The position numbers and the translations under genes were made by a program. From positions 186,001 to 250,000 of the forward strand of contig NW_025767300.1 in assembly GCF_003918875.1 (NCBI RefSeq): a stretch of 64,000 nucleotides of DNA. Reading direction: 5' to 3'. Under the pieces are notes generated by a model, which saw only the letters and a program-made list of their open reading frames with translations, had not been told where the DNA came from and did no database searches. The DNA comes from Haliotis rubra. Taxonomy: Eukaryota. Positions 25,372-57,822 of this stretch are shown here, one piece after another (the stretch's first letter is position 1; each line of letters opens with the position of its first letter).

Positions 25372-28300
25372 TCAACCAACAACTAGAGTTCCCTCATCAG
25401 GGAAGGAATAAATTGGGACCTCCAGGTTCAATGGAGCTGGTCCTTTTCTGATTCTACCAGAGGCGTCATAGTGGGAGCCATGGCAAGGACAGTAGTAGCC
25501 ACCAAAGTCACCAGCATTGGCTATTGGAACGCAACCTGCAACGGGGAATGTAAACATGATTACATGGTACGATCAAACAGAGACAGAACTGACTTGTGTA
25601 AGTCCACATACGTGGCGCTGCTGTGTAACACTGTTAACTATAGTTTGTGGCTGAAGTTTTACAAACATACACCGAACGTTTGCCATCAACTCTTATCTTT
25701 GTTCTAATGCTTGGTATTGATACTTTTCTTAAGAGTTTTAAGTACCTAACCTTTAATCTGGTAATACCTTTTCATAAATAGATCATCATTGTTTCATAAA
25801 ACTGCTATGGCCACATCCAGTGTCATGATGCATTGACTTACTAGTGCAGATCATGTTCAATTCAAGAGTTTGGGCTGTGATTCAACTGGGCTCATAATAA
25901 GCATGATAAGGGCAGAAATAATGAAGACACTTGGTCTAAACAAAATCTTAACTTTGCAACATATGCAGTAATTACATCTGTGAGAATATACATTCATTTA
26001 CAATGTGGCAACCTGAAGAAACTGGATGAATCATTTTCTTACCTAAATGTGTACAAACACCAAGTAAAACAAGCCACTCAGGATTGGTTGCTCTTTCATT
26101 GTCATGTTCTGCGTGTCGCAAAGTGCTGAGATCAACGCCTTGTTCAGCTTCTATCTCCTCAGCGGTACGGTGTCTAACAAACAGGGGCTTGCCTCTCCAC
26201 TTGAAGGTGACATTCTTTCCCTCTGGAATTTCAGCCAGCTTGATCTCGATCTGGGCCAAAGCCAATACATCAGCTGATGCGCTGAGAGTGCTGACGAACT
26301 CTGTTACTAAGTTCTTAGCAGCATATGCAGCAGACACACTGCCACCTGGAGGAGAACAACACAGTTACACAACAAGTTGTGGAGAACAATGATGTATGTA
26401 ACACACACAGAATCCTGTGTCCTTTCAACTCATAACTAGGTGCAAAGAAATGCATTACATGGGACACATACAAATTAACTCTATAACTGACTAGAGTATG
26501 TAAATATTCATGAACACAGCAGTCAGCATTATTTCAGCTACATGTATATCAAACTGACCTGTGAATAAGAGAAGTCTAGGTCTGACAAACCACTGGTTAA
26601 TGAGAAAAGTCTGTGTGACATGCTATCAACAAATGTCACCAGTTGAAACCATCTCATCCAAGTAGTGACCTCTAACAAGCTAAAGAATACTGGAAACCTA
26701 ACTCGGATCTCTAAGCTATAATACTGACTACAGATAATAAAGGGATTCCAGGTGTCTTCCCTATGGTTACATTGTGCATATCATGACTCCCTTCTTGACC
26801 CCCTCCTCAGAGTCAGTGATAATCAGTACAACAGTACACTTTTAGGAAACTTTATGCAGGGATTGGGAAAGGCAGGGGCCATTTTGCACATTAGAATAAA
26901 AAATGGCCCATTAAAATTTTGAAGTTTACTATTGATACCAGGGCAGTGGCCCATTCTAAATTCAGAAAATGGCTAATAATCCTGAAAATAGCCCATTGCC
27001 AAAGTTCTCTATCCCAATCCCTGTTTATGTCACTCAAGCTTTAGACAAGAACAGACAACACCATATAATTATCAAGCACAATCACTACTTCCAATCATCA
27101 GATCTCAAGTACACCCAACTCTGCTAAGCCTGTTACAATTCAGAAAAACAACCCTTGATGGGCTGTCAAATTTTTAATTTACAGTCAGCTGTTTATAAGG
27201 AACATGTTTATAACAAATTGACGGATATAATTATAACATTGTTTTGGTCCTGACCACTGGCTGTATACTTTAGTCAAAATGGGTATAACCAACTATGAAC
27301 TAATATTAGTGGTCCCTTGAGTTCATCATATTTATAGTAGACTGTGTATATTGACTTAAGAAGTAACCATGGTATCACTACTACCTGTAACCACAACAAT
27401 TACAGGTCATAATATTTTCTTGTTTCTTGTTGTTGAAGAAAATTCTCATTACTGTCTGCCAAAAGACAAATATTTAATTACCTCCAACCATCATGTAAGT
27501 AAATGATCGTCGAGCAACAGCTGAGTTCTGTGAGGATTGTTGACTATCCTTAACTCCATCACGACGATAGAAAGAGAAGTCTGGGACAGGGATGTCTGTG
27601 TGAGCAAATCTCACCTGATTTGAAGCTGAAATCGAAAATACAGTCATGGATTATCAACTGTTAAAGTATGAGGTGAGGTGAAATGGGATTTAACATCGTA
27701 CTTGAGAACATTTTGCTCATAGGACAACGTAAATGAATCATTGCATGTGTACGTGTGGCTGCTTGTACTACCTCAGACTTAAGCTGGTTTTATAGTGCTA
27801 GCTCACCGAGATACCATGCAGCAGTTAAGCATGAATACCCCACTTAGACCCATTATACTGACTCAGAGCAAACCAGTCCTGCTTTATCAAATAATGCCGA
27901 GTGTCAGGCAGGGACCAACAAGTACCATATTTTAACGTCTTTTGGTATGATGGGGCCGGGGATCGAACCCGGACATCAACAAATAGTACTCAAAATACCA
28001 GTCAGTCCATAATAACAGTCATTAGGGGCTTATTTCGGCTAGAATGCACTTTACTGGGCGCAGCCCTCGCTGCTCACTGCGGGGCAATAATCACACTATA
28101 GGGCTACTGCACTGTTTCAAGCCCTGTCTCACTATATCACGGTAATTGCTCCGTCCCCCTTCACTTGCATCTTTAGAGTCAAACAACCCTTTACGATCCT
28201 TCGGGTTAGGAGTTAGGGTTAGGGAACCTTTACGATCCTTAGGGTTTAGGATTAGCACCCTTTCTGATCCTTAGGGTTAGGGTTGGGAGTGGGGTAGGGT

Positions 28301-29281
28301 TAAGGACCCTTTCCGATTCTTATTTAGGGTTTGACTTTACCTTAGGGCAGTATAATCCTATCATATCCATATCACATCCTATCAAACCATTGTGCTGCGT
28401 GCGTGGTTTGATTTCATTTCTTGCGCTTCCACCTCACTTCTGTGCAAATGACCCGTTAAACGAGCACTCATTAACTGTGATGGTGCTCGTGGTCCCGAAG
28501 TAGAGCGTCCGCCAATTACGTCACTAATTAATAAAGTCAGTAATCCGGCGAAGCGTGTTTGAGCCCCAGCAGCGCTAATTAATCTAAAAAAGTGTGCCCA
28601 GTAAAGTTCAGTACTCCCCTTATTTCAACAGTGACAGCAGTATTTTGGACACTAAAAAAAGATATACTTACGATAACATTAGTCTCACATCATGTAGGGG
28701 ACAAGCCCACCCCAAACCCTGTTATTTGCCTTATTATAGCGAGGTGACTAAAAATGTAGGCGTTTTGCAGGAACTGTTGCTAAGGAAAGAGTTCGTGCAC
28801 CTTCCTTGCCAATATGGAAGGTGTTTAGACCTTACTGAAATTCGGATTCATAACAGGATTAGATACATAGTTCAATTCATATGCAAATCATATATATCTG
28901 TACTGCTAACTATATAAAGAAAGGCTTTCGAACTGCGTGACGGTTGTAGGTCAAGAAACGTTAAATGATACACGTTTGATTATCTAAGAATACTTTCCTG
29001 TTAATTGATTGTACACTTATCTTTGAATTATCCAGCCAGTGTTAAGTATATATCAACCGTAATTTCGCTCTCAGATCATACTTACATGCAAGTCCTGATG
29101 TGGCCCGTAAAGCATTTTTCGGGAGCAAGTCTGACATTGAGAAATGTGTGAGCACTGTTTTAGGTTGCTGGACAACATATTTTTCGCCTTTTTGGACAAC
29201 GCCTGGAACAGATGCTCGTATCGCGTTAGGAACTACCTGCGAAACTGCAGAGAGAACCGCAGATTTAGGGATAGATATCAT
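25372..29281 (-). CDS. UQCRFS1: Cytochrome b-c1 complex Rieske Fe-S subunit, mitochondrial; 4 exons, 268 aa
   Basis: Exons 29281-29086, 27625-27482, 26345-26043, 25535-25372 (807 nt, in frame, GT-AG). Rieske boxes CTHLGC and CPCHGSHY, plus [26 protein letters not shown] and [10 protein letters not shown]. Confidence 0.97.
26857..27023. mobile_element. Short hAT-like MITE with 6-bp TSD
   Basis: CAGGGATTGGGA...TCCCAATCCCTG; TSD TTTATG. Confidence 0.8.
27669..27973 (-). mobile_element. V-domain-type SINE
   Basis: Diverged copy of the 18297 element, including GGGATCGAACCC. Confidence 0.8.
28023..28622. mobile_element. Non-autonomous DNA element with internal TTAGGG-like repeats
   Basis: TGCACTTTACTGGGC near the left end and GCCCAGTAAAGTTCAGTACTCCCCTA at the right end; internal CCTTTACGATCCTTAGGGTTAGG repeats; partial copy at 30880-30998. 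Confidence 0.55.
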
Positions 29282-30203
29282 TTTGGTGGTGACTTTCACC
29301 CCTTCCCTAGCAATTTACGAAACTTGTGGTAAAGGACGTTTTACGTCACACATAAATCCTGCTATTTTCCTAACAACTTTTGCGCCGCCATTTACTCGAC
29401 CTCTGTTGATCTAGCTATTATTTCCTCGGTTTATTTAAATTTCGGGATAAAATTTGTAAACGTGATCGGTAATTAAAAATGGTACAACCATCAAAGTTTG
29501 GACACCATGTGCGAAATACCCATTATGTCGGAAAGCGCACGTTAAATCTCCAAATCATCTAAGGTTACGCCTCTAATCGTTGTGCAGTGAGAGGACACTT
29601 CACTATGCAATAACGCGTCATTAGAATTATGTCCGCAAATCTGCTGATAACCATTTCCAAAAACGCACGAATGACCGATAACGTGTCATCGTTCCCCGAC
29701 GGAACGAATAGCTTTCTTCACTTGACAGCTTGGTTATACCTCTGTGTGTCTTAAATGAAACGGATATGAATATATCCAACCATAACATGGTGTTGCATTT
29801 GTTTACGCCAAGATTTCCTTATAGCGCGAAACTGTCGTGCATGACCGAAAGTATAACCCAAGAACAAAGCCATGTCACCAGTAGGAAAATACCCGCATAC
29901 ACGTTTGCTCTGAAAGAAACACGACGCCTGCCTCAAAGATGAAATGTATTTGAAACTAGTCTATCGGCAAATACAATATTAATTGCCGTGCGTTGTTCAA
30001 TATGTCGCAGACTAGTCAAAGGCATATCAAAATACGTCATTTTGAAATCCATTGATATAATTATATACTATTGAATATCACATTATCTATGTTGAGTTCA
30101 ACTATTGTCAAAGAGGAACAGAAACACATTGATTGGCTGTTGCGACAATGTATTGAATTACCTATTTTGCGCGGTGCATCATGGGAGTCTGGTACTTTCA
30201 AAA
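29282..30203. promoter_or_regulatory. Bidirectional promoter, UQCRFS1 / chromodomain-TM gene
   Basis: 922 bp between divergent ATGs; YY1-like CGCCGCCATTT (29383-29393), reverse CCAAT GATTGGCT (30131), ZNF143/Staf-like TGCATCATGGGAG (~30175-30187). Confidence 0.55.
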
Positions 30204-33200
30204 ATGGCGAGCTCAGATAGCGAAAGCTCTTACGAGGTAAACCGTTATTTTCAATACTTCTTGGACAAATGATGTATTCAATCAGTGTTCAAATATGGTC
30301 CTGGTGTTATTTCTACATCATATTGTTTGAAATTCGGTATATCATATCCAATTACATGGTAGTCATGTCAATGTTTACGACAAAGTAGTGTGTGGTTTCG
30401 ATTTCCGCATTGTGTCTTCACAAAGTCAACAAAAGAAGCGTCTTGTGAAACACAGATAGTACCTGTTAATCAGATGACGAATTTAAACTTTGTAGCTTTG
30501 TGGGTATTCAGTGGTATTAATCCGATCAAATCAAAGATCAGCTGAAAGTCGATACCGATAACGCTTTACTTATCGAAGATGCCGCTACCGTGTTCCCCTA
30601 GTGTTTATACAGGCCAAGCGCATAAACAAGGGGCTTCTCGCGATCATGTGGTATCCATTTCATTAACTACTAGCCACCTGCGCTAAGAGTGTGGTGGTGA
30701 TCAAACATACATGTCAGAGGTTAGGCTCTACGTAAAGGTCAAGTAAACGCTTCATGGGATACGGAATTGCATTTTTCTCGCTAAAATTACTTTTTAGGAT
30801 TACGTGAAAGGGAAAGAATTCTGATCGTTATAGTTCACAGCTAATTCACTTTCATGTTGCTTTTAGATATGTTATGCTGCTCCCTTTACGATCCTTAGGG
30901 TTTAGGGTTAGGCACCCTTTACGATCCTTAGGGTTAGGGAACCCAAGCAGCGCTAATTAATCTGAAAAAGTGTTCCCGGTAAAGTGCAGTACTCCCTATG
31001 TTGTTTTTAATTAATAAAATAACATCAGATTTTATTAATCAAGTGTTTGTAACAATCAGAAGTTTTACCAGGTAATGTATTGTTCATGTTACCTATGATT
31101 TATTCTTTACAAAACAAGCAATGTTTCACACGAAGATAAGATCTTGCATTTGGTTACTTCCCTTTTAGACATGTAACAATATATCAATATCGTAAGGAAT
31201 ATAGCTTGCATATGGCGATGATGGTAGCAGACAGCTAAGTAAACTGACTCGCGTTCGATTCCCGAGGCTGAATACACAACCGGCAGTTGTTGAACCTCGT
31301 GTATTGTTTTTTAGACCCTGCACACTTTATTGCCCTTATATTTAGTGTGTTTTATGGGTGACAGTTCATAATCTTGGTTTTTGAGAGGGGGGGTACGGGC
31401 GGAACTCTTACCAACCAATGTATTATGTAAGTAAAACAGGTGCGTAATACTTTAGTGGAGTTACATAACCATAACATTTGGACAATGCAGAATTTGAGTT
31501 CTTCTATCAGATCCATCATGGCTAATATTTAAATGGATTCCTAAGAGGGATTTTTGTTACAGAAGAAATAGAAGAAATTTTGCTACTGTTAATCGCTGAT
31601 GATGTTGCATTAGTGGATGATTCAGTAGTTGGTTTACAGAAAGTACAGGCAATTTTAAATCCCAACATCAGTGCTCTAGATCTGTGAATGTTCACCATCG
31701 GTGAATGTGCCTGCATTCTAGGTTTGCTACTTTTCTTCCTAAATTGTAAAATATATATGTCCCTCTTCTTCAACCCTTGTTTTAATGACAAAACAATATC
31801 CAAATACATCGTGAAGATAAATGCACTTTGAAGTTTTGAATTCTGTGAAAAATTCCCTTTTCTGTGATATTGTCCACTGGTTGGGAGGCAAAATTGCCTA
31901 TTGAAATATATGTGCATTGTAATATATTGTCATTTTTGACGTATTACTAAACCATCATTAGCATAGTTTGGAGTAATTTAGTTTAGTGCAGGGCTCCATA
32001 TAACTTTTGGGGGTGCGAGTGTACTTACACATCATATTGCAAGTGGAGGTGTACTGAGAATTTTGAAGGAGTACTGACATGTTTTTGGTGATGTGGTTTG
32101 TGATGTGGTTTGTCTCGACGATTCACCGATCACTATTTCCAACCATGTATTTGTATTTGAAGACGCGTGAGAAATAACTGAGCGACGTTGTGATGCGACG
32201 AAATGTCAGGTCCGACTGGATATAAATAGGAACAGTGTAGTTTTTAGCCAATCGAAAAATAGTGACGCATATCGTTGCATGGCAATGCAAGTGATTCATA
32301 CTGTCAGCGTTTCCTCATGTGTCAAATCGTGTTTCGCAAAAGAAACTTGACAAGTATTTATCCGAAATAGATTTCCATTTGCACGATACGCAGGGAAATT
32401 AAATGTTATACGTACAAAGGTATTTTTTGCCGTACACGATACTCTTGAAATCTTATATTATGTCGTACTTAATTGATTTTGAGGCGTACATTATGCCTGT
32501 ATGCCCCTTATCTGTAGCCCTGTTTGTGTATGTTTTAATCTAAATCTTGAATTTTTACTGGAGGGATTGATTTTTTAAAACCAACTGTGTTATTGTGATC
32601 ACAGATATTTTTGTTGTTTGATCAAATCACTAATGATCATTCTGAAACTTCGATGAGGACCATAGAATTGCTGAGAATGTTGTGGAAAATACACAAACAG
32701 AACGCTGATGGGAACTTTTAGCCATGTTGCAAAGTGTTATAAAATCATGTCACATGTATGTTGGCCTACAACATTACCTATAATTCAAAATTAGTTTCCT
32801 TGTGTACTGGTCAAAATTAAATGACAATTGTTATTTGCCACCAATACCATGTGTTTTGTTAAAATCCAGCAAAAAGCTAGATGTGAAAACACAGCACTTG
32901 GAAAAGAGCACTTGTTTGAAATGTAAACAAAGCCAATTTCAGATTTTTCACTGTGTATCATTTTCTCATATTGGGAGAGATCCTTATGCCTACTCATTGC
33001 ATACACTTGCTCATAAGTTTTAGATCATGCATGGGAAGAGTATCTTAGCAAACATTAGAGAAATAAGATCAGGTGTTTTCCTATGGTTTGGTACATTCAA
33101 CACAATATATTATAGTTTCAGCAAGCAAATTCACGCTCAGCATTTACAGTACTTCTCACAAGGAAAACAAAAAGAAAATAACAACATGCCGATTTGGAGA

Positions 33201-36200
33201 ATATTTTCGATTTCTTACATGCTGCATTTATGCATATACATTGTCTGAATCAACAAAAGTCTCCCTAATGTCCTGCTTACTCATGTCACCCAACACACCA
33301 TTTTGTGAAAATCGCTTGCCGATAGCGATGTCATACGTACCTCAGCATTGTTGTACATATTTTGTATTTCCATTGAGGTCAGATTTATGAATGAAAATAC
33401 ACATGACCAATCTATCTTGCTGCTTACATTTTCAGTTATAAGGCTTCTTTCATATTTTTACATGATACTTTTTTTAATAATTTCAGTATTAGTCTGTGTT
33501 GCTTTGGGACTAGACAGGAGACCAGTCTAAATTTATTGGCACCAATTACATCATAATCAAGGGAGGGTAACTTTGGCCTGTTTAGCTTTGAAAACAAAGA
33601 CCTCATATTGGCAAACATTTCAGCACTTATATTGAGCATTCTACTTCAAAGTGAGAAAAATGAGCGTATATTTTCAAGCATTGATGTTAACTGATTCAAA
33701 ATTCCATGAGTATGAGCACAAGCTTTCAAAGCTATCAAAGTGCCTTACTTTGGGCACAACAAAATCTGAACCCCTAGCCGGAAAATACAGATCCAGTATA
33801 GGAAAAGTCGTTAAAAGACTTTGAATTTGACTAATTTGTGACAGTGGCTGCGAAATAAGGATCATGATGCTTATCATATCAAGAGATAGTTGTATCATGA
33901 CAATCCCTACTTACTTTGAACATCAATATGATGATGTATTGTTTGGTCCACTCCATCAACATGAACAATTTCAGTGTAAAAAGACAGGAAGTTGATTTTG
34001 CAGGTGGATCAGATCTTGAATCAGAGGAAGAGGAAGGGTGTTGTAGAGTACTTGGTGAGATGGCGAGGGTTTGGGAAGGAGGAGGACAGCTGGGAACCTC
34101 TCAAGAACCTCGCCAACTGTGCCGCTGCCATGGCTGCATATGTGAAGCTTACGGTAGGAGGATTTGTGTGTCATAGAAATACATTCTGTGGAGCTATTTT
34201 CAGAAATAGGTCTTGTTTAAGACCTTGGTTTCATTTGTTGGTCTTAACATACATGTATCTGTTGGATAACCCTTTTGTCAAATATATGTCGGTTTTTGCA
34301 GTTAAGTAATTCCTGTTATAATCCTATTCACTTTATCATAGTCAATCTTACATCCTTTCCCAGGCACCATCTAAAACTCAGAAGAAGTCTACAAAGTCCA
34401 GATCACGGTCAAGGTCACGATCCACCAGCCGAAGTAGAACAACAAAGACAAAGAGCAGTCGCTCACGAACCCCAAGAGCCCGCAGTCGAACTCCTAGATC
34501 CCGATCACGGTCATCATCAAGAGGTAGACAAGCAAAACAGCCAGAAACTCCACCACGCCAGTCAAGAAGAACAGAAGTTGTCACAAAATCTTCCACAAAC
34601 CGAACTCCAGGTAGAGTTGAAAGAACAACAGAAGTTGTAAAGGTGAGTTCCCAGCTGAATGCAGTTGTTTCTTGCAAGTCCTTTTGTGTTCGCGCAAACA
34701 TAAGGAGAACTTGAACTTATTTCTCAACAAAAAGTGGTCCTGGAATTGTATTATGGAAACTGTTCTTGATCTTACTCCAAAGCCTTGTTTACTTTTACTT
34801 TCACTTTTGAGATGTAGCTTCTGGCACAAATCTCATGGGAGTACTGTCATCAGAATTAGTTCAATATCATAAGCCGACATATAGCTTCATTCTGATCAGT
34901 ATTGAAAGTAGGCGATGTGGTACTGTTGAATGAATAAGTTTATTTGGTTCGCACGTAAGCAGTATCATTTATATTATGTTATGTGGTTAACTATGCATAT
35001 AAGCACATTGTACAATCTTTAAAACTGTTGCACATGACAAAGTAGTGAAATTAAGTGTTATATTTCTGCAAAAGAAAGAAAAGAAACATCGGTCCAAATG
35101 GGAATGGTATCAGGTTATCAGTGTGGCTGTTTTGAAAACTGAAGCTTATATGTGTAGAAGTAAACATAGAAATGCCTCATCTGAATTTTGAGGTGGCTAA
35201 TTGGAGTTTGGAGCGATAGTAATATGACCTTGAAACAAATTGCCCCAATGCTACCTTAGTGTGGAATCAGAGCCAAGCCATTACCCTGAAGGTTTAACTG
35301 GTTAACACCCACTTAACAGTCTTATGTGACTGATAGAAATTGTTGTTTCTAATTAAGCAAATACGAGATGAGTCAAAGCCAACTGAGGTGAAGACGACAC
35401 GGGTTGTACAATCACGGACAGAGGTGAAGACAGTGGAGGACAAAGTTGACGGGAAGCTTGTAGCTGCCAAGCCACAGGAAGGTACTGGCACCAGCCTGTA
35501 CACACTATGGCAGACAGCTGACACAGCAGTCCTCATTCTGTTTGTCTGTGTCTCCATCATCGTTCTCAGCTATGTTGTGGAGAACTACTGCAGGTATGTC
35601 CACTCACATATTATCAGGGTTTTACCCTCAGAATGGAGGGGGGTGAGGGTTGTCCATAAATAATCATTTGTGATGTTACTTGCAGTCACCATGGGCTTCC
35701 TCTGAAGTAATGAAATGGTGTAGTGTACTGTATATTTAGGTAATTACTTGAGTGAATCATTGATCATATGGACAGTGGTTTTGATTGATGGATGAAACAA
35801 GTACATTGTACATCCATTAGGGCTGCTCCTGTGTAGTAAGTACTATGAATATACTGGCTACATATGTGTGTCACGAGGACAGATTGGTGACACTGCCCTT
35901 GTTGGAGCAGGGCACATAATGCAGTGAAAGCAGCATCTGTAAACATGAAATCACAAATGGTTGATAATATAATGATTCTGAAAATATTACACTAGTCTGG
36001 ACAGGGTTATAGTTATGGTGAATTTGCTGTTTGGGGGATTTTGTTTTGTTATTCTCACTTAGCGGTATACATCAACCTTGTTGATCAACATATTGTTAGA
36101 TTGTTAAACATCCTAATGTCTGTGAATGATCTCAGAATTTTAATGTTATGTCAATATACCAAGAATAAAAAGATTTGTGCTCAGCATATTGGTCTCTACA

Positions 36201-36679
36201 TCTCTACAACAAGATGGCGGTCAAATGTGAATATCTAACACGGATATAGCTTAACTAAATTTCTTGGTTTGGAGTTCAAGTTATAGTTCTACACCTGGGT
36301 GCTGCATCTGGTACATCATAAAATGGTTTAGGTTCAAGGTCACACTTTTCTGGAGAGGTATTAGTGCATTTATCTTTCACTTGGTATATACCTTCTTCAG
36401 AATGGAGGCCTTTTTTTAAGCATTTTGGGAAAACATGGGTGTCTAGTCATAATTAGCTACCATGGTAAGTGTAGTAAATGGTTGAGGATTGTTTCACATA
36501 TAAGCACAAATTGCTATTGCAGCCCTTCTGCAATGTGGAAGTTTCTGGTTGGTCTGTACACATCTGTAGTTGGAGCTGTTGTTGCTGTGTGGCAGTGTGT
36601 GACAGCATCAACGGCAAGGGCTTTGGAGACAGCAGCAAACTTCACCCGCAACAGTTGGAAGAAGGTTACCACCAACTAG
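30204..36679 (+). CDS. Uncharacterised chromodomain + RS-rich + transmembrane protein (~284 aa)
   Basis: Exons 30204-30236, 34004-34153, 34364-34642, 35358-35593, 36523-36679 (855 nt, in frame, GT-AG). Chromodomain SYEVDQILNQRKRKGVVEYLVRWRGFGKEEDSWEPLKNL; RS tract KSRSRSRSRSTSRSR...RSRTPRSRSRSSSR; hydrophobic AVLILFVCVSIIVLSYVV and FLVGLYTSVVGAVVAVW. The last-exon choice is less certain. AATAAA at 38565. Confidence 0.82.
30880..30998. mobile_element. Truncated copy of the TTAGGG-containing DNA element
   Basis: Shares CCCTTTACGATCCTTAGGG repeats and the terminus GCAGCGCTAATTAATCT...GTAAAGTGCAGTACTCCCTA with 28023-28622. Confidence 0.65.
31540..31655 (+). mobile_element. Non-LTR (CR1/L2-like) reverse transcriptase fragment
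   Basis: Translates GIFVTEEIEEILLLLIADDVALVDDSVVGLQ, resembling the LL(F/Y)ADD RT catalytic motif. Confidence 0.55.
31989..32522. mobile_element. hAT-like MITE related to 9504-9994
   Basis: CAGGGCTCCATA...TTATCTGTAGCCCTG; near-identical 6-bp flanks TTAGTG / TTTGTG. Confidence 0.65.
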
Positions 36680-38754
36680 ACCCAAGAAGGAGCACTCTCA
36701 AGCCACGGAGGCCTCTAGTGCAGACACTCGTAGATGTGTGTACCTTAAAGCATTGATAGTGTCTACAGCAGGCAAGGGTGTAGCATCTCCACATTCAATA
36801 ACACAACACAGGAAATCACGAATGGAATTGTCAAATTGTACATTTTCACTTTTTAATGAAGTCATGAAGTTCATATTGACAGTGATTGCTCTGATACTGC
36901 AGTCTCAAATCTAATATCCTCTGATTCTTTTAAGTAGTGTCAGGTTTTAACATTCTAATATTTTTTTTAAAGTAGCTTTTGAACAGGTTGCTTATCATGT
37001 AGGAAAAAAAACTGCTCTTCTTTACATATTGTACCAGTTAAGTGTAAGCTCATGTGAGATTTTATAAGATATTCTATATTTTTCCATTCTTAACATTCCC
37101 ATTGTTTTAATCCTGCACTGACCAAAGAGTTACCTCCCCTAACATGTCAAAACAAGCTTCCATTCATGTCTCTGACTGAAAGTTTCTGTGAAATATTGAT
37201 ATGAAAAAAAAACAGATATTTTTTTTTTTCCCTTTCTAGCATCGGTTTGGATGCAGTGTTGGATATTGAATTTGTACAGTGATGACTCTTTGTATAGGAG
37301 GTATGAAATGGATGTTCATTGTTGGCCTGTGTACTGCAAATAGGCTTCTAAAAACTCTTGCATTCTTACTTGATCTAGTCTTAGTTCTTACATTACAGAC
37401 TTATCACAGTATTGCTGTATTTATGTAGTGTCTGGATTATCAGGTTTAGATTTGTGTGATTTTTGCTTTACAATGTGTTCAAAATCAGAAGTGCTATCTA
37501 TGTATTTCTTTAAAATAGGCAGCAACAAACAAATGGTAAATCATTGATACAGAATCAGGACGAACCAATCTTGAAATACTGAAGCAAAGATGAGCAGAAC
37601 GTTGCAGATGATAATCATGATAACTAAAACTGTTGACTAAAGGAAACATTTTCTGAGGAGGGTAATTGTTGTACAGTTACAAGGTTTGGAGATGAAATGT
37701 TCCTGAAAATCACTGAATATGTATGCAGACAATATGATCATTTCCACTGAATTATATCTTAGATGTTCACCAACTGTACTTTATGTAGGTAGTAGGTACA
37801 TTGTAGAAGATATTCCCAGAGTGATCCTCTTCATCTGTGCCGACATCACTGCAGCTATACAGTTCATACCCTGCAGGTTGTGTGCTGCCTGGTGACAATG
37901 GTCTTGCTCAGTTTGTCATGTTCAATCATCTTTCATTTCATTCAATCACTATAAGTGAACCTTCCTACCGATTATGTGTTCTTTTATATAAGAGTGCTCT
38001 CATGAAATACATTTAGCAATTTTTGAAACTTTTAACTTTACATTGACATGTTTTACATCATTGTATAAAATTATCCTGTATGCTCTTACTGTTAAATGTA
38101 ATACTTTTGGTCATAATGTTGTCACTGGTTTTAATGTTCAGTTTCATTTCTCATCCAAATCATCTTTATTTTCAATGAATACTGTGCCAAACATTCTGAT
38201 TTCAATTTCATTGGTTTTAATAGATTTTTAATTCATGTGTTGTGTAAACTGTGTTCAGTAGTATTCAGACAATGCATACAAAGGATATGCAATTACTAGT
38301 AGTTCAGGTTATAGCTTGTTACTTCTCCCTACATACTGCCTACTGTTGACAGTGCACATCAGTCTTGGACATTTGATCACAGCCATTTTATAAATGTAAA
38401 GAGAATTATGTATGAAAACCCTGTGCAACAAATCAGCAGCCACACATGGTATTACTAATGGGCAGCTAGGAAGTGTTTATCAGCTAATATTGTTAACCAT
38501 TTTTAGCACTTTTTCACCAAATCTCTGTATGCAGTAAAGTAACGTAGATGTACCTATATATACCAATAAAGGAAAACAACTTTGTAATTTCTTGAGTCTT
38601 GTTTCTATTTCTGAATTATACCACTTGTGTTAAATTCAGCGGAGTTGTACTTCTTTAGGACACGTTATTTCACAGATGTTGTGGTGTGCAGCCAAAAACA
38701 AGACTAGTTTGTTGTTAAAGGTACTCAAGTTTTCATATATATCCCTTTTATCAC

Positions 38755-41423: not shown

Positions 41424-44400
41424 TTTTTCTTATCCTGACTCATGCTTATTGCTTGTCTCCCTTTTCTTCCGAATGCTAGTGGAACACTTGAATCCCCCTT
41501 TTGAAGCTCCCTTAAAAAAGCGGACATAAAATCACTCACCAGGTGTTATCTCCCTTCCTAGGGTTTTGGCGGCAAACAGCGCCACCTGTCACCCATGCTC
41601 CTCACTCTCTCCTTCTTCGCCCGAGTGGGCGGTTGTGAGAGCGCCTGGGTCCCCTATACGGCATTATATCCTTTTCTAATTTAGGCTGTATTACTAAATT
41701 AGTTGTATAAGGCTTTAGGAAGCATTTACCAACAATATGGTTTGAAATAATTTGTCAATTTTGTCTGTTTATTCACGTTTTTACGTGATTGTTCAGATTG
41801 TTTACAATTGATGAAATCTTGCATTCATTGCAGGTACAGATTGTCTGATGCTGATCCACACGTACTATGGCCTAATTGCACGGCCTGTGTGCTCTTCAAG
41901 CTTTCGCTGTCAGTGTGTTTACACCTGTCCGATTTTGAAATTAACAATTATTTTCATTATTTGTTTAGACAGACGACATTTGTAAGACATTTGTCTAAAC
42001 CGGCTGAGCCTGCGGAGGACTGTCAGTTGGTGTCTGCGCAGATCCACCGTTCCAGTGTACTACCGGGGTCGTCTGCGGAGGATGTTGCTGTCGTAGACAA
42101 CAACGCTGGCTCGAGGAAGAGGGGGGCGGTGGGGTAGCCTAATGGTTAAAGCATTGGCTCGTCACGCCGAAGACCCGCGTTCAAATCCCCACATGGGCAC
42201 AATGTATGAAGCCCATTTCTGGTGTCCCCCGCCGTGATGTTGCTGGAATATTGCTAAAAGCGGCGTAAAACCAAACTCAGTCAGTCAGTCAGTCGAGGAA
42301 GAGGTCATCTACATCTGATAACTCCTCATCGCAGTCTAATAAGACTAGGTCATCATCTTCCAAGCGGAAGAAGACAGTTGCAGCTAAGACTTCGTCAAAG
42401 TCTCTACATGGGGCAACGCAGAAGACGAGGTCCTTCTCAGCTGAGATCGTCCCTCCTGAGGAAGTAGATGTCTACGATGAGCCTCCCATCCTCATCCCTG
42501 AGGTCATGGCTGAGAAGAAGACGAGGGCATCTTCTACCGTGACGTCAGCAGTCATCTCTACGCCAGACGACCTATCGACGCAGACATCGGGTTCCAGAGA
42601 GGTGCAGCGTCTCTCAGATGCGTCGTTTCTGCAGCAGCAGTCAACGCAGAACTTCAACCCGGGCACCTTTATGCAGCAGTTCACCCAGCAGATGTTGGAC
42701 CTGATGGAACAATGGTTCGCGAAGGAGAGGGCTGCGATGAAGACTCCATCAACGACGAACCTGCACGAAGGACATCCTGTCTGCACATCACGTCCCATTG
42801 AAGTCAACAACCTGCGCAAATGTACAACCTTGCGCGAAGGTTCCAGCATGTCTACGACGCCTGCGCGAAGATCTGGCAGCCCTACCAACGTGGAGCCTAC
42901 ATCAGATGCCTTGGCAGAACCTTCAAGAACCTTCAAGAAGAAGAAGACACGAATCTTCAAGACGACGCGTTCGCGAACCTTCAAGAACAAGAATACGTTC
43001 GCCGAACCTTCAAACGAGAAGACGTTCGCCGAACCTTTAAGGAGAAGACGCTCGCCGAACCTACGCAGATCTTTCTCCATCTCAGATGCTGACAGTCGTC
43101 AGGAACCTGCACGCAGGAGATCTTTATCAGAGAATAAGAGGATAAGAGAATCTACACCTTCACGAAGGCACAGAGATTCATCTCAAGATTCTAACCCTCG
43201 TCAGAGCTGTTTACCTGCGCGCAGGTGCTCATAAAGGCATTCGCGAACATCTACATATCCACGCAGATCTCCACGAAAGCATTCGCGAACGCATGGATCT
43301 CCATGAAGGTCTCCACGCACGTCTACACGCAGGTCTTCACGCACGCAGAGTGGAAGCCTGCGTGAAGGAAGAAGCCTACAAGGAGAAACCGGCGTGAAGG
43401 ATCACGCACTTGAACAGACTTAGATGTAACGGAAGATCATCCCAAAGAGCCTTCGCAAAAGGAGTAAAATAGACATCCTTCGGAACATCCCACTTCACCC
43501 TCAGACCTGGATCTTCGTTGTGAGCCTACGCAAAGGAAGAAATCTTTGCCTGCGCCGAAAGACAGAGGGATACGTCTCAAGGTTTAGAGGGTACTCTTAT
43601 CTGGATTCATCACTTGCGCACAGATCGTCATGCAGATCTTCAGGCAGGTCGTCAGGCAGATCTAAAGGCTGATCTCCAGAAAAGGATTCAGGATCTTCAA
43701 AAAGATATATCTACACCAGAAGATGGTAGCGGGATTAACAGCACACAAACACTCCTCGGCGCTGAGAACCTACACTTTCACGAAGGTTAAAGATGCTTCT
43801 TAAGAATCCAGGAGGGACTCATGTCCATATACAGATCATTCACCTGCGTGCAGATCTTCAGGCAGTCACGTCGTCAGCGGTTCAGAGCTAACAACTTGAT
43901 AGATAATACCGGAGAATTTCAGCCAGCCTTGGTAAGGCTATGAAGTTCCACAGTCAACATATCCCCGACATCCAAGCCAGGGAATTCCCGCTACTTCACA
44001 TGGAACCCTTCATGAAGGCTCCAGAGATTGATGTGAACTGCAAGATCATCAACGACTCCCGTTGTAGAACTTACACTGAAGTTGCAAGTATCAACTCTAC
44101 AAAAACCTTTGTGTATTTTACGGCGCTTCATTGAGACCGATGAATACAGTCTACAAGTAACAGCGTTAAGCAAGTATGGAATTTCAGCTGATCATCTGTA
44201 TAAGATGACGACTGCATTATCTTCAGGGATGAAGGAACAGTCACAGCAGCCAGGGAGACAGTCTACCTACATCGATATTACGCGGCGAAATCCTTCGCGC
44301 GTTTACCATTCAGCCCTCTATACACGTGGTCACTCGTGTAACTTCGGGAGGTTACGGACAAGGCCGAGTGCTGATGAAGAAATCAACGACTGCACAAGAT

Positions 44401-47400
44401 TTTACAAGGATCTTTTTCCTGCAACACCGGTGACGTCACATCGCGGGAATCTGAAAGGAATCAAAATGTTGCATTTTGATTGGTCCATGAGAGACAACAC
44501 CCTGCGCAGAAGTCGGACATCGCTCACATGTCAGGAAGTTGTCTACAGATTGTAAACAACATTTCAACGTGGCAGTAGGGCTCCATTTACAGTCCAGTTA
44601 GCAGGGTACAGGGTGATTTGACTGTCTTCACGGGATTTAGAGACCTTCCCTGTCAGCAGATTGAAGACTGTTAATCCAGCGAATTGCAGCAACATACGTT
44701 TGACGAATTTTGTTCGCGGCAGCCAGTCTACTATATATAGACTTCACAACCATGGCAGTCCCAGATTCGGAGGTTGCTTGGCTTCCTTTACGGACATGGC
44801 AAGGATTCCACTGTCTACTTTCTTACAACATAGAACATGAGCAGATTCTGGGAAGATGTTTCATCTCACCACAGAATGAAAAGGTCATCTCAGAGGATCG
44901 TTGTGTCTAGATACAAGCCATCCTATCTCAAGCACTACTCTCTCCATTACCACTATGAAGTTGGCAGAGCCTACTCAGACTTCTCACGTCAGCACAAGAC
45001 ATGACTCACAGAGGAAGACTACAATTGCGCCCACTACATGTGTTCGTGAACGCCCGTTTCAATAGTCTGTACTCCTTCGGACTACCGGACGGATTGAAAC
45101 CATATTTTCTATGGTGGACTCGGAAGTCGAATATTTGCGGAGGAATCTACTTATCAGAGCGGAGTGCAACACTCATCTCTACGTAGATGCATCACTTCAA
45201 GGCTGGGGAGCTCACCTCGACAACGAAGTGGCAGCAGGGAAATGGTCGAGTCAGGAGCAGTCTGCATATCAGCATGCTTGAGATGAAAGCAGTTGTAAAC
45301 GCCTTACTACACTGGTCCAGCATACTAAGGAATGCACAACTGATGATCCACACGGACACAGTGGCGTTCTACATCAACAAACAGGGATCAACAAGGTCAA
45401 GATATCTACTAGACCTCAGCTTTCATCTGTTCAGCATAATAGATGACTTGAACATCTACATAAGAGCATGCCACATTCTTGGAGCCAAGAATGTGATAGC
45501 AGACGCCCTATCTCGTCCAACACAACCATCCCCGACGGAATGGATGCTTCATCCAGAAGCCTTTAGATACATCATACAGACGATAGATTTCCGCTAATAG
45601 ACCTGTTTGCAACAAAATTCAACAAACAGCTACCAACATTCGTCTCTCCAATTCCGATCCACAAGCATGGGCAACAGATGCTCTAAGCTTCTCCGGGGTA
45701 GGACTAAACGCTAAGGCATTTCCACCTCCAGCTCTAATACCACAGGCGTTGCAGAAAATCAAGCAGACGAGGAAGCTGCAACTGATTTGGTCGCGCCTTA
45801 CTGGCCAGGAGAATGTGGTTTCCTATTCTCACACAAGAATTTGGAAGTCCAAAACCTGCTGATACATCCACACACCAAGCAAGCACACGGGAACTCCACA
45901 GTGTGCCAGCTACACGCATGGAGCGTATCAAGACTTGCTTGACGAAAAGAGAATACTCTGCCAGAGCAGCGAAAGCAGTTACACTAGCTCTACGCAGATT
46001 TACCTGCAACTTGTACGACGACAAGTGGCAGAGTTTGAGAAACATGCACTGAGGAAGGGCTTCACAGCTATGAAGGCAACACATCCTCAAGTGGCGGAAT
46101 ACTTTTGTCATCTAAGACAAACAAGGCGGTTAAAAGGTTCAACACTCTCTACATACCTAGCGGCCCTCAGCACAGTTATCACCTTGAAGACTGGTGTTAA
46201 GTTGACTAAGTATCAGAGATACTGGCCCTACTACGCTCCTTCAAGTTGGAAGACTGACAACAGAAGTTAGAGCACTGCTTGGGATCTCAATGCAGTGTTG
46301 CAGCATCTCACCAGTGACGCTTACGAACCACTAGAAAGGACATCCTACGAGTTTCTGACACAGAAAACTCTCTTCCTGATCGCATTGGCAACAGCAGCAC
46401 GGATTGTCAGAAATACATGCTCTGGACTTTGAACGTATACGTTTTGATGCACATCACAACATCGTTCATCTGGGATTAAGATGGGACTTCATAGCTAAGA
46501 ATCAACCCGACAGACAATTCCACGTCCCAGCATTATCAACAATCCTTGGGCCACAGGATATCCAGGACCTATCCTTATGCCCAGTCAGAGCACTGAAAAT
46601 CTATTTACAAAGGTCTAAAAACAGGAGACAAAAATTCAAACGCCTTTTCATCCCCATATCGTCGGAGACACCCACAGAGATCTCACGCACCACTCGATAT
46701 CAATCTGGATGAGAGCAATCATCCTAAGAGCCTACAAGACAGCAGGACTTGAGCCTCCACGAGCCTACAACCCTCATGAAATCAGAGCGCTGGCATCTAC
46801 ACTCGCTCTGCATGGAAACTGCTTAATATCTACAATAATGGAAGGATGTTTTTGGAAATCAGAGTCGGTGTTTGCTAACCACTACCTCGGCGGAGACATC
46901 GCTACCGAGACGTCTCCGGCATCCACCAGTTTGGGCCTCTTGTTGTAGCACAACAACTGACAGTTCCGCTATGGCGCTGAGATGGATCTCGCCCTTTTAG
47001 CACATGTCTTTCCAGCTCATACTCTGGAGAGATAGAGCTTAAAGTCCATGTACACATCTAGAACAGACTAGTATGAGTACAAACCTTGTACTTGTAAAGG
47101 ATTTACTCGTACATATAAAGGGTTACTTCTCCACTTGATACGAGCATCAAGAGTTGGAGTCGCCTAAATCCACACATATGTCAACAGAAGACAGATCTGA
47201 TAAGTTGTGGTCCCCCCAAATTCATCAGAGAAACCTGGAATATGGATCAGCAGCAGCAGCAGTGCCATCAGAAGTTCCCATGGGGGGTATATAGGACGTA
47301 AATGCATCAGTTAGGAATCCAGAAGTGGCTTGACCCACCACCATTTCCGACGGATTCTACAAGCAATAAGCATGAGTCAGGATAAGGAAAAATATGTAAT

Positions 47401-57069: not shown

Positions 57070-57432
57070 TCAGTTCGTAAGCGCAACAAGTGCTTCCACA
57101 ATGTTCCCTTTATGTTCTCTCAGAACTCTCTCCGCCTGTATTCGTCCAATTTCAATTTCATTCACAATTAGATCTACGTCATCTTTGTTTATCTTCACTT
57201 TCGAAAGTTCTCTTTCTCGTTCCTGTCTCTCAGAAGCTTCTTTAGCTTTGCTGACATTCACAACCCGCATGGCATCACTGATGCTCTGAGCGGATATTTC
57301 TGTTTCTTCGACATAGTCAGTTACTTTCTCTAAATCGGCGGCCCCTGAGTCATGTTTGGCAACCTTCTTTGATTTGCCTTCCTTCTTATCTTCATTCTCT
57401 TCGATTTCAACGTTTTCTTCCTCCGTCGCCAT
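57070..57432 (-). CDS. HYPK: Huntingtin-interacting protein K (NatA-associated), single exon, 120 aa
   Basis: KHDSGAADLEKVTDYVEE and C-terminal UBA-like ELSKVKINKDDVDLIVNEIEI...AERVLREHKGNIVEALVALTN; intact ORF; AACATGG Kozak context; minus-strand AATAAA at 56655-56660. Confidence 0.95.
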   Translation of the reverse strand: MATEEENVEIEENEDKKEGKSKKVAKHDSGAADLEKVTDYVEETEISAQSISDAMRVVNVSKAKEASERQERERELSKVKINKDDVDLIVNEIEIGRIQAERVLREHKGNIVEALVALTN

Positions 57433-57731: not shown

Positions 57732-57822
57732 GCCTCGGTAGCGCAGTAGGTAGCGCGTCAGTCTCATAATCCAATTGGCAAGAGCCATCTGAAGGTCGTG
57801 AGTTCGATCCTCACCCGGGGCA
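57732..57822 (+). tRNA. Elongator tRNA-Met (CAT) with an 18-nt intron (57769-57786)
   Basis: Spliced sequence GCCTCGGTAGCGCAGTAGGTAGCGCGTCAGTCTCATAATCTGAAGGTCGTGAGTTCGATCCTCACCCGGGGCA folds as a cloverleaf nearly identical to metazoan tRNA-eMet; T6 terminator 57829-57834; TATA-like element about -30. Confidence 0.93.

What the first reader, a model, noticed from the sequence alone, without database searches (positions are those of the whole stretch)
30204..36679. Chromodomain-RS-transmembrane protein: candidate heterochromatin-to-nuclear-envelope tether with LBR-like architecture
Seen: five in-frame exons give an N-terminal HP1/Polycomb-type chromodomain with the aromatic-cage positions intact (Y of SYEVD, W of VRW, F of RGF, plus the DSWEP motif). 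It is followed by a ~60-aa basic RS/RTP tract, a linker, an 18-19-aa hydrophobic helix and a second hydrophobic/amphipathic segment. There is no chromoshadow, SET, crotonase or sterol-reductase domain. Established: vertebrate Lamin B receptor is Tudor + RS + TM and tethers heterochromatin at the inner nuclear membrane; C. elegans CEC-4 is a chromodomain anchor for H3K9me chromatin; RS tracts are SRPK substrates and TP sites are CDK-type sites. Inference: this protein swaps LBR's Tudor for a methyl-lysine-reading chromodomain, giving a single-chain, phospho-regulated H3K9me/K27me membrane anchor. I know of no named family with this layout. The ORF track misses it because it is split across exons.
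Basis: partly seen in the sequence, partly recalled or inferred. Interest (0 to 1): 0.85.

Follow-up and report, generated by a model that had tools for sequence, protein, structure and literature searches.

The report
Membrane-anchored chromodomain protein of molluscs
This abalone gene really does encode a histone-mark-reading chromodomain joined to an arginine/serine tract and a membrane anchor. It belongs to an unstudied family conserved across molluscs, and it is a good but untested candidate for pinning silent chromatin to the nuclear envelope.

Summary
Five GT-AG exons on the + strand (30204-36679) splice uniquely into a 284-aa protein. That protein is identical to RefSeq XP_046545026.1 of Haliotis rubra, automatically named "cec-3-like".

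- **Chromodomain:** residues 10-59 score Pfam E 3.7e-15. The model superposes on H3K9me3-bound CDY1, Rhino, CBX1 and MPP8 chromodomains at 0.6-1.3 A. The Y10/W31/F34 cage is intact.
- **Middle and anchor:** next come a conserved RS tract, a disordered linker and one strongly hydrophobic helix (residues 210-228).
- **Family:** about 40 orthologues share this layout in gastropods, bivalves and one nemertean. The five-exon structure with intron phases 0,0,0,2 is conserved in the five genomes mapped.
- **Transcripts:** dozens of spliced oyster mRNA contigs carry chromodomain and anchor in one uninterrupted ORF.
- **Selection:** dN/dS between two abalones is 0.15.

The second hydrophobic segment is not a conserved membrane span. 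The aromatic cage is incomplete in heterobranch snails and the nemertean. Nothing here shows nuclear-envelope localisation.

No searchable paper describes the family. Homology to nematode CEC-4, and whether abalone has a canonical LBR, could not be tested. The LBR/CEC-4-like tether reading is the best explanation, at about 50% confidence.

The parts
30204..30236 (+). Exon 1: start codon in a good Kozak context (A at -3, G at +4), acidic N-terminus, and first cage residue Tyr10. The intron falls between E11 and V12, phase 0.
   Evidence: The same short first exon and phase occur in H. rufescens, Patella vulgata, Dreissena and Magallana.
34004..34153 (+). Exon 2: chromodomain core (residues 12-61), including W31, F34, W41 and E42.
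   Evidence: Pfam Chromo E 1.8e-14 on this exon alone. Closest solved sequences are CDYL, CDYL2 and CBX5. AlphaFold pLDDT is about 90, and Foldseek matches H3K9me3-bound chromodomains.
34364..34642 (+). Exon 3: basic RS tract with TP sites, plus the first two 'TEVV' motifs (residues 62-154).
   Evidence: Composition. The RS core positions S77, R80 and S83 are invariant in 29 orthologues. Predicted disordered.
35358..35593 (+). Exon 4: threonine/valine-rich linker with two more TEVK motifs, then the transmembrane helix. It ends in phase 2.
   Evidence: A phmmer search with this exon recovered the full-length protein P0001 at 100% identity.
35523..35579 (+). Transmembrane helix, residues 210-228. 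It is preceded by the invariant Asp209 and followed by Glu229.
   Evidence: Kyte-Doolittle 2.8 and approximate insertion energy -2.8 kcal/mol. Every one of about 40 family members has exactly one such segment. D209 is invariant.
36523..36679 (+). Exon 5: short loop, second helix, basic amphipathic tail, and stop codon TAG at 36677-36679.
   Evidence: AlphaFold predicts helix 234-283 with pLDDT 84-93.
36542..36598 (+). Second, moderately hydrophobic helix (residues 240-258). It is a possible re-entrant or hairpin span in abalone, but amphipathic or charged in most orthologues.
   Evidence: Approximate insertion energy is +3 in abalone and above +8 in 26 of the 36 family members that have a tail long enough to score.
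29282..30203 (.). Intergenic stretch between the divergently transcribed Rieske iron-sulfur protein gene (minus strand, start codon ending at 29281) and this gene. Probably a shared promoter region; this is inferred.
   Evidence: Neighbour call; Pfam hits on its exons. The same head-to-head pair occurs in H. rufescens and Magallana gigas.

Best explanation
The locus is a genuine, expressed, five-exon abalone gene (Haliotis rubra). Its 284-aa product has four parts:
- a cytoplasm/nucleoplasm-facing HP1/CDY-type chromodomain;
- a conserved arginine/serine tract;
- a disordered Thr/Val/Glu-rich linker;
- a single C-terminal membrane anchor, with an accessory second helix in abalone.

**Shown:** the architecture, its conservation with the same exon structure across gastropods and bivalves (the layout also in a nemertean), purifying selection, and mRNA continuity in the oyster orthologue.

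**Inferred mechanism:**
1. There is no signal peptide and the anchor is near the C-terminus, so the protein inserts into the ER with its N-terminus in the cytosol.
2. The roughly 205-residue (about 23 kDa) extralumenal part is small enough to diffuse around nuclear pores to the inner nuclear membrane.
3. It is retained there because the chromodomain binds methylated histone H3 (most likely H3K9me, possibly H3K27me) and the basic RS tract binds chromatin or self-associates, as in the lamin B receptor.
4. The result is a one-chain tether that holds heterochromatin at the nuclear envelope.
5. The tether is probably loosened in mitosis by SRPK/CDK phosphorylation of the RS tract and TPxR sites.
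For: **Gene and protein**
- The spliced model is unique and identical to RefSeq XP_046545026.1.
- Chromodomain: Pfam E 3.7e-15. The AlphaFold chromodomain has pLDDT about 90 and superposes on CDY1, Rhino, CBX1, MPP8 and HP1 chromodomains solved with H3K9me3 at rmsd 0.6-1.3 A, TM-score 0.8-0.9.
- Cage residues Y10/W31/F34 align with the HP1-alpha cage positions; the W31 and F34 positions are seen directly in the alignment to CBX5.

**Family**
- About 40 orthologues in Vetigastropoda, Patellogastropoda, Caenogastropoda, Heterobranchia, several bivalve orders and Lineus share the same order of parts.
- W31, W41, E42, the RS core and Asp209 at the membrane boundary are invariant.
- Each member has exactly one strongly hydrophobic 19-mer, 5-77 residues from the C-terminus.
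- The C-terminal halves are homologous without the chromodomain: BLASTP E 1e-9 for abalone against oyster, 3e-4 for Lineus against a bivalve-like protein.
- Five exons with phases 0,0,0,2 occur in five genomes.
- The gene tree recovers the four gastropod clades sampled and several bivalve subgroups; bivalves as a whole are not recovered as one clade.
- dN/dS is 0.147 overall and below 0.27 in every part.

**Expression**
- 89 index blocks whose contigs are under 2 kb (Logan, in the places read) carry the uninterrupted M. gigas ORF; the contigs inspected have AATAAA close to their 3' end. The genomic gene has four introns.

**Established knowledge used**
- LBR combines a Tudor reader, an RS domain phosphorylated by SRPK1/CDK1, and membrane spans (PMC5617974).
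- CEC-4 is a chromodomain H3K9me anchor of the nuclear envelope whose C-terminal part gives rim localisation even in yeast (PMC4783997 and PMC5788517).
Against: - There are no localisation, binding or phosphorylation data for any family member.
- The third cage residue is Ala, Asp, Glu or Lys in heterobranch and some other sequences and Cys in Lineus. The first is Met or Leu in Mercenaria, Dreissena and related sequences. Methyl-lysine reading is therefore not a family-wide constraint.
- A C-terminal anchor does not by itself specify the inner nuclear membrane. The protein could reside in the general ER or elsewhere.
- The distribution appears limited to molluscs plus one nemertean, but the searches were limited by a word index and by length filters.
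- For abalone itself, transcript continuity is inferred from the RefSeq model and from orthologues, not seen directly.
Confidence: 0.5

Rival explanations
1. It is a nuclear-envelope reassembly or membrane-recruitment factor rather than an interphase heterochromatin tether. The basic RS tract and chromodomain would bind mitotic chromosomes and pull ER membrane onto them at mitotic exit, switched by mitotic phosphorylation.
For: The same architecture supports this reading as supports the main one. Inner-membrane proteins with basic chromatin-binding regions, such as LBR, LAP2-beta and MAN1, drive ER spreading onto chromatin according to the abstract of PMC2717638. A TPxR site next to the RS tract recurs in Haliotis, Patella, Ostrea and Lineus. 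The head-to-head pairing with a housekeeping respiratory gene, and the many oyster RNA-seq assemblies, suggest broad expression.
Against: It does not exclude the tether role; LBR does both. It would not need a methyl-lysine cage, yet the cage is retained in most lineages.
Confidence: 0.15
2. It is an ER or nuclear-envelope protein whose chromodomain reads a non-histone methyl-lysine, or has lost reading, and whose RS tract works with SR proteins, RNA or SR-kinases at the membrane. On this reading it is not a chromatin anchor.
For: The cage is incomplete in heterobranchs, Lineus and some bivalves while the RS core and anchor stay invariant. MPP8 and CBX3 chromodomains have been solved with, or reported to bind, methylated non-histone peptides (DNMT3A; G9a) as well as histone peptides (entry 3svm; title of PMC3325965). 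RS tracts are typical of the splicing machinery (weak RSRP Pfam similarity).
Against: In abalone the cage and peptide-groove residues are those of H3K9me3 readers. There is no RRM or other RNA-binding domain.
Confidence: 0.15
3. It is a membrane-tethered, releasable chromatin regulator. The protein would be stored in the ER or nuclear envelope and cut within or near the membrane, as with SREBP or ATF6-type factors. That would free a soluble chromodomain-RS fragment into the nucleus.
For: This is only circumstantial. There is an invariant Asp at the membrane boundary, and helix-perturbing Ser, Cys or Pro residues lie in or next to the helix: 'SDYP' in bivalves and 'SDIP' in Lineus. A Patella caerulea isoform lacks the chromodomain, which hints at modular use.
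Against: No protease site or regulatory lumenal domain is recognisable. Lumenal tails are short and variable, 5-77 residues.
Confidence: 0.08
4. The gene model is an artefact: a chance or chimeric joining of a chromodomain exon to unrelated downstream exons.
For: No abalone RNA data were seen here. The first exon is only 33 nt.
Against: The same joined ORF is present as uninterrupted mRNA contigs from many independent oyster runs. The exon structure and phases are identical in five genomes. About 40 species carry the same order of parts. dN/dS is 0.15.
Confidence: 0.02

Closest known systems
Lamin B receptor (LBR, vertebrates)
   Same: The order of parts matches: an N-terminal methyl-histone reader of the Royal superfamily, then an RS tract next to CDK-type sites, then membrane anchorage, with the N-terminus facing the nucleoplasm. 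LBR's RS domain is the SRPK1/CDK1-regulated chromatin-binding and oligomerisation module (PMC5617974).
   Different: It has one anchor helix (two at most) instead of eight spans. It has no ERG4/ERG24 sterol-reductase domain, no second globular HP1-binding domain and no sequence homology. The resemblance is convergent.
CEC-4 (Caenorhabditis elegans)
   Same: Both are small proteins (270-290 aa class; the CEC-4 length is from memory). Both have an HP1-like chromodomain, no chromoshadow domain, and a C-terminal part without recognisable domains. In CEC-4 that part confers nuclear-rim localisation, and the protein directly anchors H3K9me chromatin (PMC4783997, PMC5788517, PMC7111258).
   Different: [quoted passage not shown] The mollusc chromodomain is N-terminal. 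Homology of the non-chromodomain parts could not be tested because no CEC-4 sequence was obtainable. RefSeq's 'cec-1/cec-3-like' names are automatic.
HP1 / CBX and CDY / CDYL chromodomain proteins
   Same: These are the closest chromodomain sequences and structures: CDYL E 9e-11, CBX5 E 7e-10, rmsd about 1 A. RefSeq names orthologues after them.
   Different: The mollusc protein has no chromoshadow domain, Pc box or crotonase-like domain. Those proteins are soluble and have no membrane anchor.
PRR14 and LEM-domain proteins (LAP2-beta, emerin, MAN1/Lem2)
   Same: The proposed role is the same: linking heterochromatin to the nuclear envelope or lamina. Emerin and LAP2-beta are C-terminally anchored inner-membrane proteins (from general knowledge). 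Lem2 has two predicted transmembrane domains (PMC4783997), like the predicted abalone hairpin.
   Different: Those proteins reach chromatin indirectly, through HP1, BAF or lamins, and have no histone-mark reader domain. There is no LEM, MSC or PRR14-type motif here.

Membership tests
Chromodomain superfamily (Pfam PF00385) | Significant match to the Chromo profile, with the three-stranded sheet plus C-terminal helix fold | tested here: met
   56 bits, E 3.7e-15, against a cutoff of 25.1 bits, over residues 10-59. All 29 aligned orthologues match. The model has strands 12-21, 24-31 and 40-43 and helix 51-61 at pLDDT about 90. Foldseek TM-score is 0.8-0.9 to solved chromodomains.
Chromodomain superfamily (methyl-lysine readers) | Three-residue aromatic cage | tested here: met
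   Y10, W31 and F34 occupy the HP1 cage positions in abalone. Across the family, W31 is invariant. Position 10 is F or Y in 19 of 29 sequences and position 34 in 18 of 29. Binding itself was not tested.
HP1 family | C-terminal chromoshadow domain | tested here: not met
   No Chromo_shadow hit at E <= 0.01 in any of 29 members.
CDY / CDYL family | C-terminal crotonase (enoyl-CoA hydratase-like) domain | tested here: not met
   No such Pfam hit. The protein is only 284 aa, and its C-terminus is a membrane helix.
Lamin B receptor | N-terminal Tudor domain | tested here: not met
The only Tudor-type hit, Tudor-knot, scores 18 bits against a 20.8-bit cutoff and overlaps the chromodomain.
   24 RS/SR dipeptides; the RS core is invariant in the family. 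Phosphorylation was not tested.
Lamin B receptor | Eight-span ERG4/ERG24 sterol-reductase domain | tested here: not met
   No such Pfam hit. There are one strong and one weak hydrophobic segment only.
CEC-4-type anchors | Sequence homology to CEC-4 outside the chromodomain | not testable with these tools
   No CEC-4 sequence could be obtained. The profile search returned only molluscs and Lineus.
CEC-4-type anchors | Nuclear-rim localisation independent of the chromodomain, and H3K9me-dependent anchoring | not testable with these tools
   This needs cell biology. Only the membrane-anchor prediction is available.
Tail-anchored membrane proteins | No signal peptide, and a single transmembrane helix within about 30 residues of the C-terminus | tested here: inconclusive
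   The N-terminus is acidic and non-hydrophobic. Lineus (all three isoforms) and a Nucella paralogue end 6-7 residues after the helix. Abalone has 56 residues after it, including a second helix.
SR splicing factors | RNA-recognition motif plus RS domain | tested here: not met
   No RRM hit.

The most novel reading that the evidence does not exclude
[quoted passage not shown] That would make it a spiralian counterpart of nematode CEC-4 built on the LBR plan (reader + RS + membrane). Direct histone-mark-to-membrane tethers would then be a recurrent, possibly ancient protostome solution rather than a worm oddity. It would also raise the possibility that CEC-4 is a divergent member of the same family.
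Probability: 0.4. Interest if true: 0.8.

Novelty: new variant of a known kind. Interest (0 to 1): 0.65.

Why it matters
How H3K9-methylated heterochromatin is physically held at the nuclear envelope is still only partly understood. The one proven direct chromodomain anchor, CEC-4, is described as worm-specific with no obvious homologue (PMC4783997, PMC5788517). Vertebrates use a different reader (LBR's Tudor domain) plus indirect adaptors.

A family in which a canonical chromodomain is covalently joined to an RS tract and a membrane helix would be the simplest tether yet seen. It gives a directly testable candidate in oysters and abalone, which are farmed animals with genomes and RNA-seq resources. 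It would also show independent evolution of the LBR-like 'reader + RS + membrane' plan. If it is not a tether, a membrane-bound chromodomain is still an unexplored way of using this domain.

Tried and rejected
1. **Passing the whole protein.** The spliced 284-aa protein has no single reference, so it could not be sent to the search tools directly. I searched with exon 4 alone, which recovered the identical database protein, and used that id from then on.
2. **Weak exon-4 hits.** P0004 and P0006-P0008 are repeat-containing or much longer proteins, or match only a short stretch, and were set aside as unrelated without further inspection.
3. **Extending the family.**
   - A profile search with the 29-sequence alignment returned only molluscs and Lineus.
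   - A search with the Lineus protein returned only itself.
   - No annelid, brachiopod, cephalopod, arthropod, nematode or deuterostome member was found, but both searches are limited by a word index and by length filters.
4. **A truly tail-anchored clam form.** The Tegillarca model ends right after the helix, but a related ark-clam transcript has the usual tail. The truncation is therefore probably a gene-model artefact.
5. **Bacterial promoter/terminator scan** of the upstream region: not applicable to an animal genome, so ignored.
6. **CEC-4 membrane association.** I looked for a description of it and for the original 2015 paper. The paper is not held. The reviews and papers read say only 'INM-associated' or 'inner nuclear membrane protein', with a disordered C-terminal domain.
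7. **Alternative-frame ORFs** over exon 3 (34275-34640) and exon 5 (36478-36756): the first was checked and is out of frame with exon 3; the second was taken to be out of frame and was not followed up.
Full report
**1. What is in the sequence**

The window is animal DNA with about 39% G+C and one 200-base N run at 9066-9265, which was left untouched. On the + strand, five segments are bounded by canonical GT..AG sites: 30204-30236, 34004-34153, 34364-34642, 35358-35593 and 36523-36679. Together they join into an 855-nt reading frame of 284 codons.

My first trial put the exon 4 end three bases too far. An exact spliced-alignment script finds this as the only solution in the window. The start codon has A at -3 and G at +4.

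**2. The model is an existing public protein, and the organism is an abalone**

The spliced protein has no single reference, so I searched 1.84 billion representative proteins with exon 4 alone. The top hit, P0001, is 284 aa and 100% identical over residues 155-232. Its full sequence equals my spliced model.

It is XP_046545026.1, 'chromo domain-containing protein cec-3-like' of Haliotis rubra. It lies on contig QXJH01000599.1 of assembly GCA_003918875.1, and the called gene span is exactly the 6476 bases of the finding. The gene is therefore annotated, but only with an automatic name.

**3. Domain check**

- **Chromodomain.** Exon 2 alone matches Pfam Chromo at E 1.8e-14. The whole protein matches at E 3.7e-15 (56 bits against a 25.1-bit cutoff) over residues 10-59. 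The closest solved sequences are the chromodomains of CDYL, CDYL2 and HP1-alpha/CBX5.
- **Structure.** An AlphaFold model built on a 29-sequence alignment gives pLDDT about 90 for residues 10-61. Foldseek superposes it on CDY1, Rhino, CBX1, MPP8 and HP1 chromodomains crystallised with H3K9me3, at rmsd 0.6-1.3 A and target TM-scores of 0.8-0.9.
- **Cage.** W31 and F34 sit at the HP1 cage positions in the HMMER alignment to CBX5; Y10 lies in exon 1, at the spacing recalled for the HP1 cage tyrosine.
- **RS tract.** Residues 62-154 are extremely basic and Ser/Thr-rich (R22, S21, T15, K9). The protein has 24 RS/SR dipeptides and four TP sites, two of them TPxR. This part and the linker up to about residue 198 are predicted disordered.
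- **Linker.** It carries four 'TEV[VK]' motifs.
- **Other domains.** No other Pfam family is significant in this protein or in any of 29 orthologues. There is no chromoshadow, crotonase, SET, RRM, LEM or sterol-reductase domain.

**4. Hydrophobic segments**

Residues 210-228 form a strongly hydrophobic 19-mer, with Kyte-Doolittle mean 2.8 and a summed approximate Hessa-scale energy of about -2.8 kcal/mol. Residues 240-258 are only moderately hydrophobic (1.8; about +3).

AlphaFold predicts two long helices, 199-231 and 234-283, at pLDDT 84-93, arranged as a hairpin. The N-terminus is acidic and has no signal-peptide character. The expected orientation is therefore N-terminus in the cytosol or nucleoplasm. 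This is inferred from general rules of membrane-protein topology.

**5. A conserved family**

- **Members.** A search with P0001 and a profile search with the resulting alignment recover about 40 proteins of 204-350 aa. Most full-length orthologues align over 75-100% of the query; a few hits align over the chromodomain only. All come from molluscs, apart from the nemertean Lineus longissimus and a few unnamed assembly-derived sequences.
- **Taxa.** Gastropods: Haliotis, Patella, Batillaria, Littorina, Babylonia, Nucella, Aplysia, Elysia, Plakobranchus, Lymnaea, Physella, Biomphalaria, Bulinus, Candidula. Bivalves: Magallana/Crassostrea, Ostrea, Mizuhopecten, Ylistrum, Tegillarca, Potamilus, Sinanodonta, Mercenaria, Dreissena.
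- **Names.** The source names are contradictory automatic labels: CBX1/2/5-like, CDY-like, CDYL, cec-1/cec-3-like, HP1, or hypothetical. The family is unrecognised as such.
- **Invariant positions.** In the alignment these are chromodomain residues E26, L28, W31, W41 and E42, RS-core residues S77, R80 and S83, and Asp209 just before the membrane helix.
- **Homology beyond the chromodomain.** The C-terminal halves are homologous on their own: abalone against oyster E 1e-9, Lineus against a bivalve-like protein E 3e-4.
- **One anchor per member.** Every member has exactly one strongly hydrophobic segment, 5-77 residues from its C-terminus.
- **Vertical inheritance.** A maximum-likelihood tree recovers Heterobranchia, Caenogastropoda, Vetigastropoda and Patellogastropoda with 98-100% support. 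It shows one caenogastropod-specific duplication. Bivalves are not recovered as a single clade, and Lineus sits on a long, unreliable branch among them.

**6.

- **The second hydrophobic segment is lineage-specific.**
  - It is moderately hydrophobic in Haliotis, Patella, Mercenaria, Dreissena and Potamilus.
  - It is amphipathic or charged elsewhere: the approximate insertion energy exceeds +8 in 26 of the 36 members with a scorable tail.
  - It is missing altogether in all three Lineus isoforms and in a Nucella paralogue, which end 6-7 residues after the helix.
  - The conserved core is therefore one C-terminal anchor.
- **The cage is not universal.**
  - Position 10 is F or Y in 19 of 29 sequences. 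It is Met or Leu in Mercenaria, Dreissena and related unnamed sequences.
  - Position 34 is F or Y in 18 of 29. It is Ala, Asp or Glu in heterobranchs and Cys in Lineus.
  - In Lineus, an alternative first exon restores Phe at the first position in isoform X3.

**7. Is it one transcript?**

- For Magallana gigas, the genomic gene spans 3855 bp with four introns.
- 89 index blocks whose contigs are under 2 kb (Logan, in the places read) carry the complete, uninterrupted 239-aa ORF.
- Contigs from several different SRA runs were inspected. In two of them AATAAA lies 15-20 nt from the contig end, so these are spliced mRNAs.
- Exon number and intron phases (0,0,0,2) are identical in H. rubra, H. 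rufescens, Patella vulgata, Dreissena polymorpha and M. gigas.
- Between H. rubra and H. rufescens, dN/dS is 0.147 overall: chromodomain 0.16, RS tract 0.11, linker 0.13, membrane region 0.26.

It is very unlikely for abalone, though no abalone RNA was seen.

**8. Surroundings**

The upstream neighbour, on the minus strand, is the Rieske iron-sulfur subunit of complex III. Its start codon lies 923 bp from this gene's start codon. The same head-to-head pair exists in H. rufescens and in M. gigas, where the gap is 295 bp. It was not seen in Patella vulgata or Dreissena within the flank fetched.

This suggests a shared promoter and broad expression (inference). Intron 1 contains short telomere-like TTAGGG repeats. 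Downstream lie retroelement and transposase remnants.

**9. Mechanism**

What is shown is a conserved, expressed protein with a methyl-lysine-reader fold, an RS tract and a C-terminal membrane anchor. The rest is inferred.

- The anchor inserts into the ER.
- The roughly 205-residue extralumenal part is below the roughly 60 kDa limit for passage of membrane proteins past nuclear pores (general knowledge).
- The protein would be retained at the inner membrane by chromodomain binding to H3K9me, or possibly H3K27me, and by the basic RS tract.
- In LBR the RS domain is the part phosphorylated by SRPK1 and CDK1. It also drives oligomerisation and chromatin compaction (PMC5617974).
- CEC-4 gives the precedent that a chromodomain protein resident at the envelope can directly anchor H3K9me chromatin. 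Its C-terminal part is sufficient for rim localisation even in yeast (PMC4783997, PMC5788517).

I put this tether reading at about 0.5. The rivals are scored in their own section:
- a mitotic membrane-recruitment role;
- a non-histone or RS-centred role at the ER or nuclear envelope;
- a cleavable membrane-tethered regulator;
- an annotation artefact, which is effectively excluded.

**10. Comparison with known families**

The protein works like LBR in plan, but it fails two of LBR's three defining features (Tudor domain and sterol reductase), so it is not an LBR. It is not an HP1/CBX or CDY/CDYL protein, because it lacks a chromoshadow or crotonase domain.

Whether it is related to CEC-4 beyond the chromodomain could not be tested. 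No CEC-4 sequence could be obtained, and the original paper is not held. Literature searches for chromodomain plus transmembrane or tail-anchor proteins at the nuclear envelope found no description of such a family.

**11. Verdict**

- Observation: confirmed.
- Interpretation: partly supported. The architecture and its conservation are solid; the function is untested; two details are corrected.
- Novelty: a new variant of a known kind of system (chromatin-to-envelope tethers) in an annotated but uncharacterised gene family.
- Interest: 0.65.

Noticed in passing
window 25972-29281 (-) versus 30204 (+); L005:1-6001; L006:1-3001: The chromodomain gene is paired head-to-head with the Rieske iron-sulfur (UQCRFS1-like) gene. 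The start codons are 923 bp apart in H. rubra. The same divergent pair is present in H. rufescens and in the oyster Magallana gigas (295 bp apart). It looks like a bidirectional promoter conserved between gastropods and bivalves.
   Followed up: partly
P0052, P0034, P0053 (Lineus longissimus isoforms X1, X2, X3): Alternative first exons change the first aromatic-cage position. X3 starts 'MSFEV', with the cage Phe; X1 and X2 lack an aromatic residue there. All three isoforms end 6 residues after the membrane helix, so they are truly tail-anchored.
   Followed up: partly
P0005 versus P0010 (Patella caerulea, same locus tag): A 220-aa predicted isoform starts in the RS exon and lacks the chromodomain but keeps the RS tract and membrane anchor. 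It could be a real reader-less isoform or a gene-model variant.
   Followed up: no
window 35520-35582 (residues 209-229) and alignment A1: The membrane helix is bracketed by an invariant Asp (D209) on the N-side and a Glu on the C-side in most species (Gln or Met in a few). This is an unusual acidic frame for a membrane helix and is unexplained.
   Followed up: partly
window 30880-30945 (intron 1): Short interstitial telomere-like TTAGGG repeats sit inside a roughly 25-bp direct repeat ('ccctttacgatccttagggtt...').
   Followed up: no
window 57732-57822 (+): A 91-nt tRNA-like element scores 57 bits against Rfam tRNA, but ARAGORN cannot name its anticodon ('tRNA-???'). It may be an intron-containing tRNA or a tRNA-derived repeat.
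   Followed up: no
window 57070-57432 (-): A single-exon 120-aa ORF carries a HYPK-type UBA domain (Pfam E 4e-17). It is probably a HYPK orthologue or a retrocopy.
   Followed up: no
window 10666-12687 (both strands): Long overlapping ORFs on both strands lie in a repeat-rich block. They give low-complexity Pfam hits (DUF3432, Cornifin), which suggests a proline-rich tandem-repeat coding region or simple repeats.
   Followed up: no
window 42000-46300 and 48028-48591: Mobile-element remnants are present. ORFs in a G+C-rich block (about 42-46 kb) look retroelement-like on reading. There is a weak tyrosine-recombinase SAM-like hit at 45935-46270, suggesting a DIRS-type element. A mariner-type Transposase_1 fragment lies at 48028-48591.
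   Followed up: no
window 2767-4323 (-) and 50147-51316 (-): Two long ORFs, of 518 aa and 389 aa, have no Pfam match. The second lies in a block with 53% G+C.
   Followed up: no
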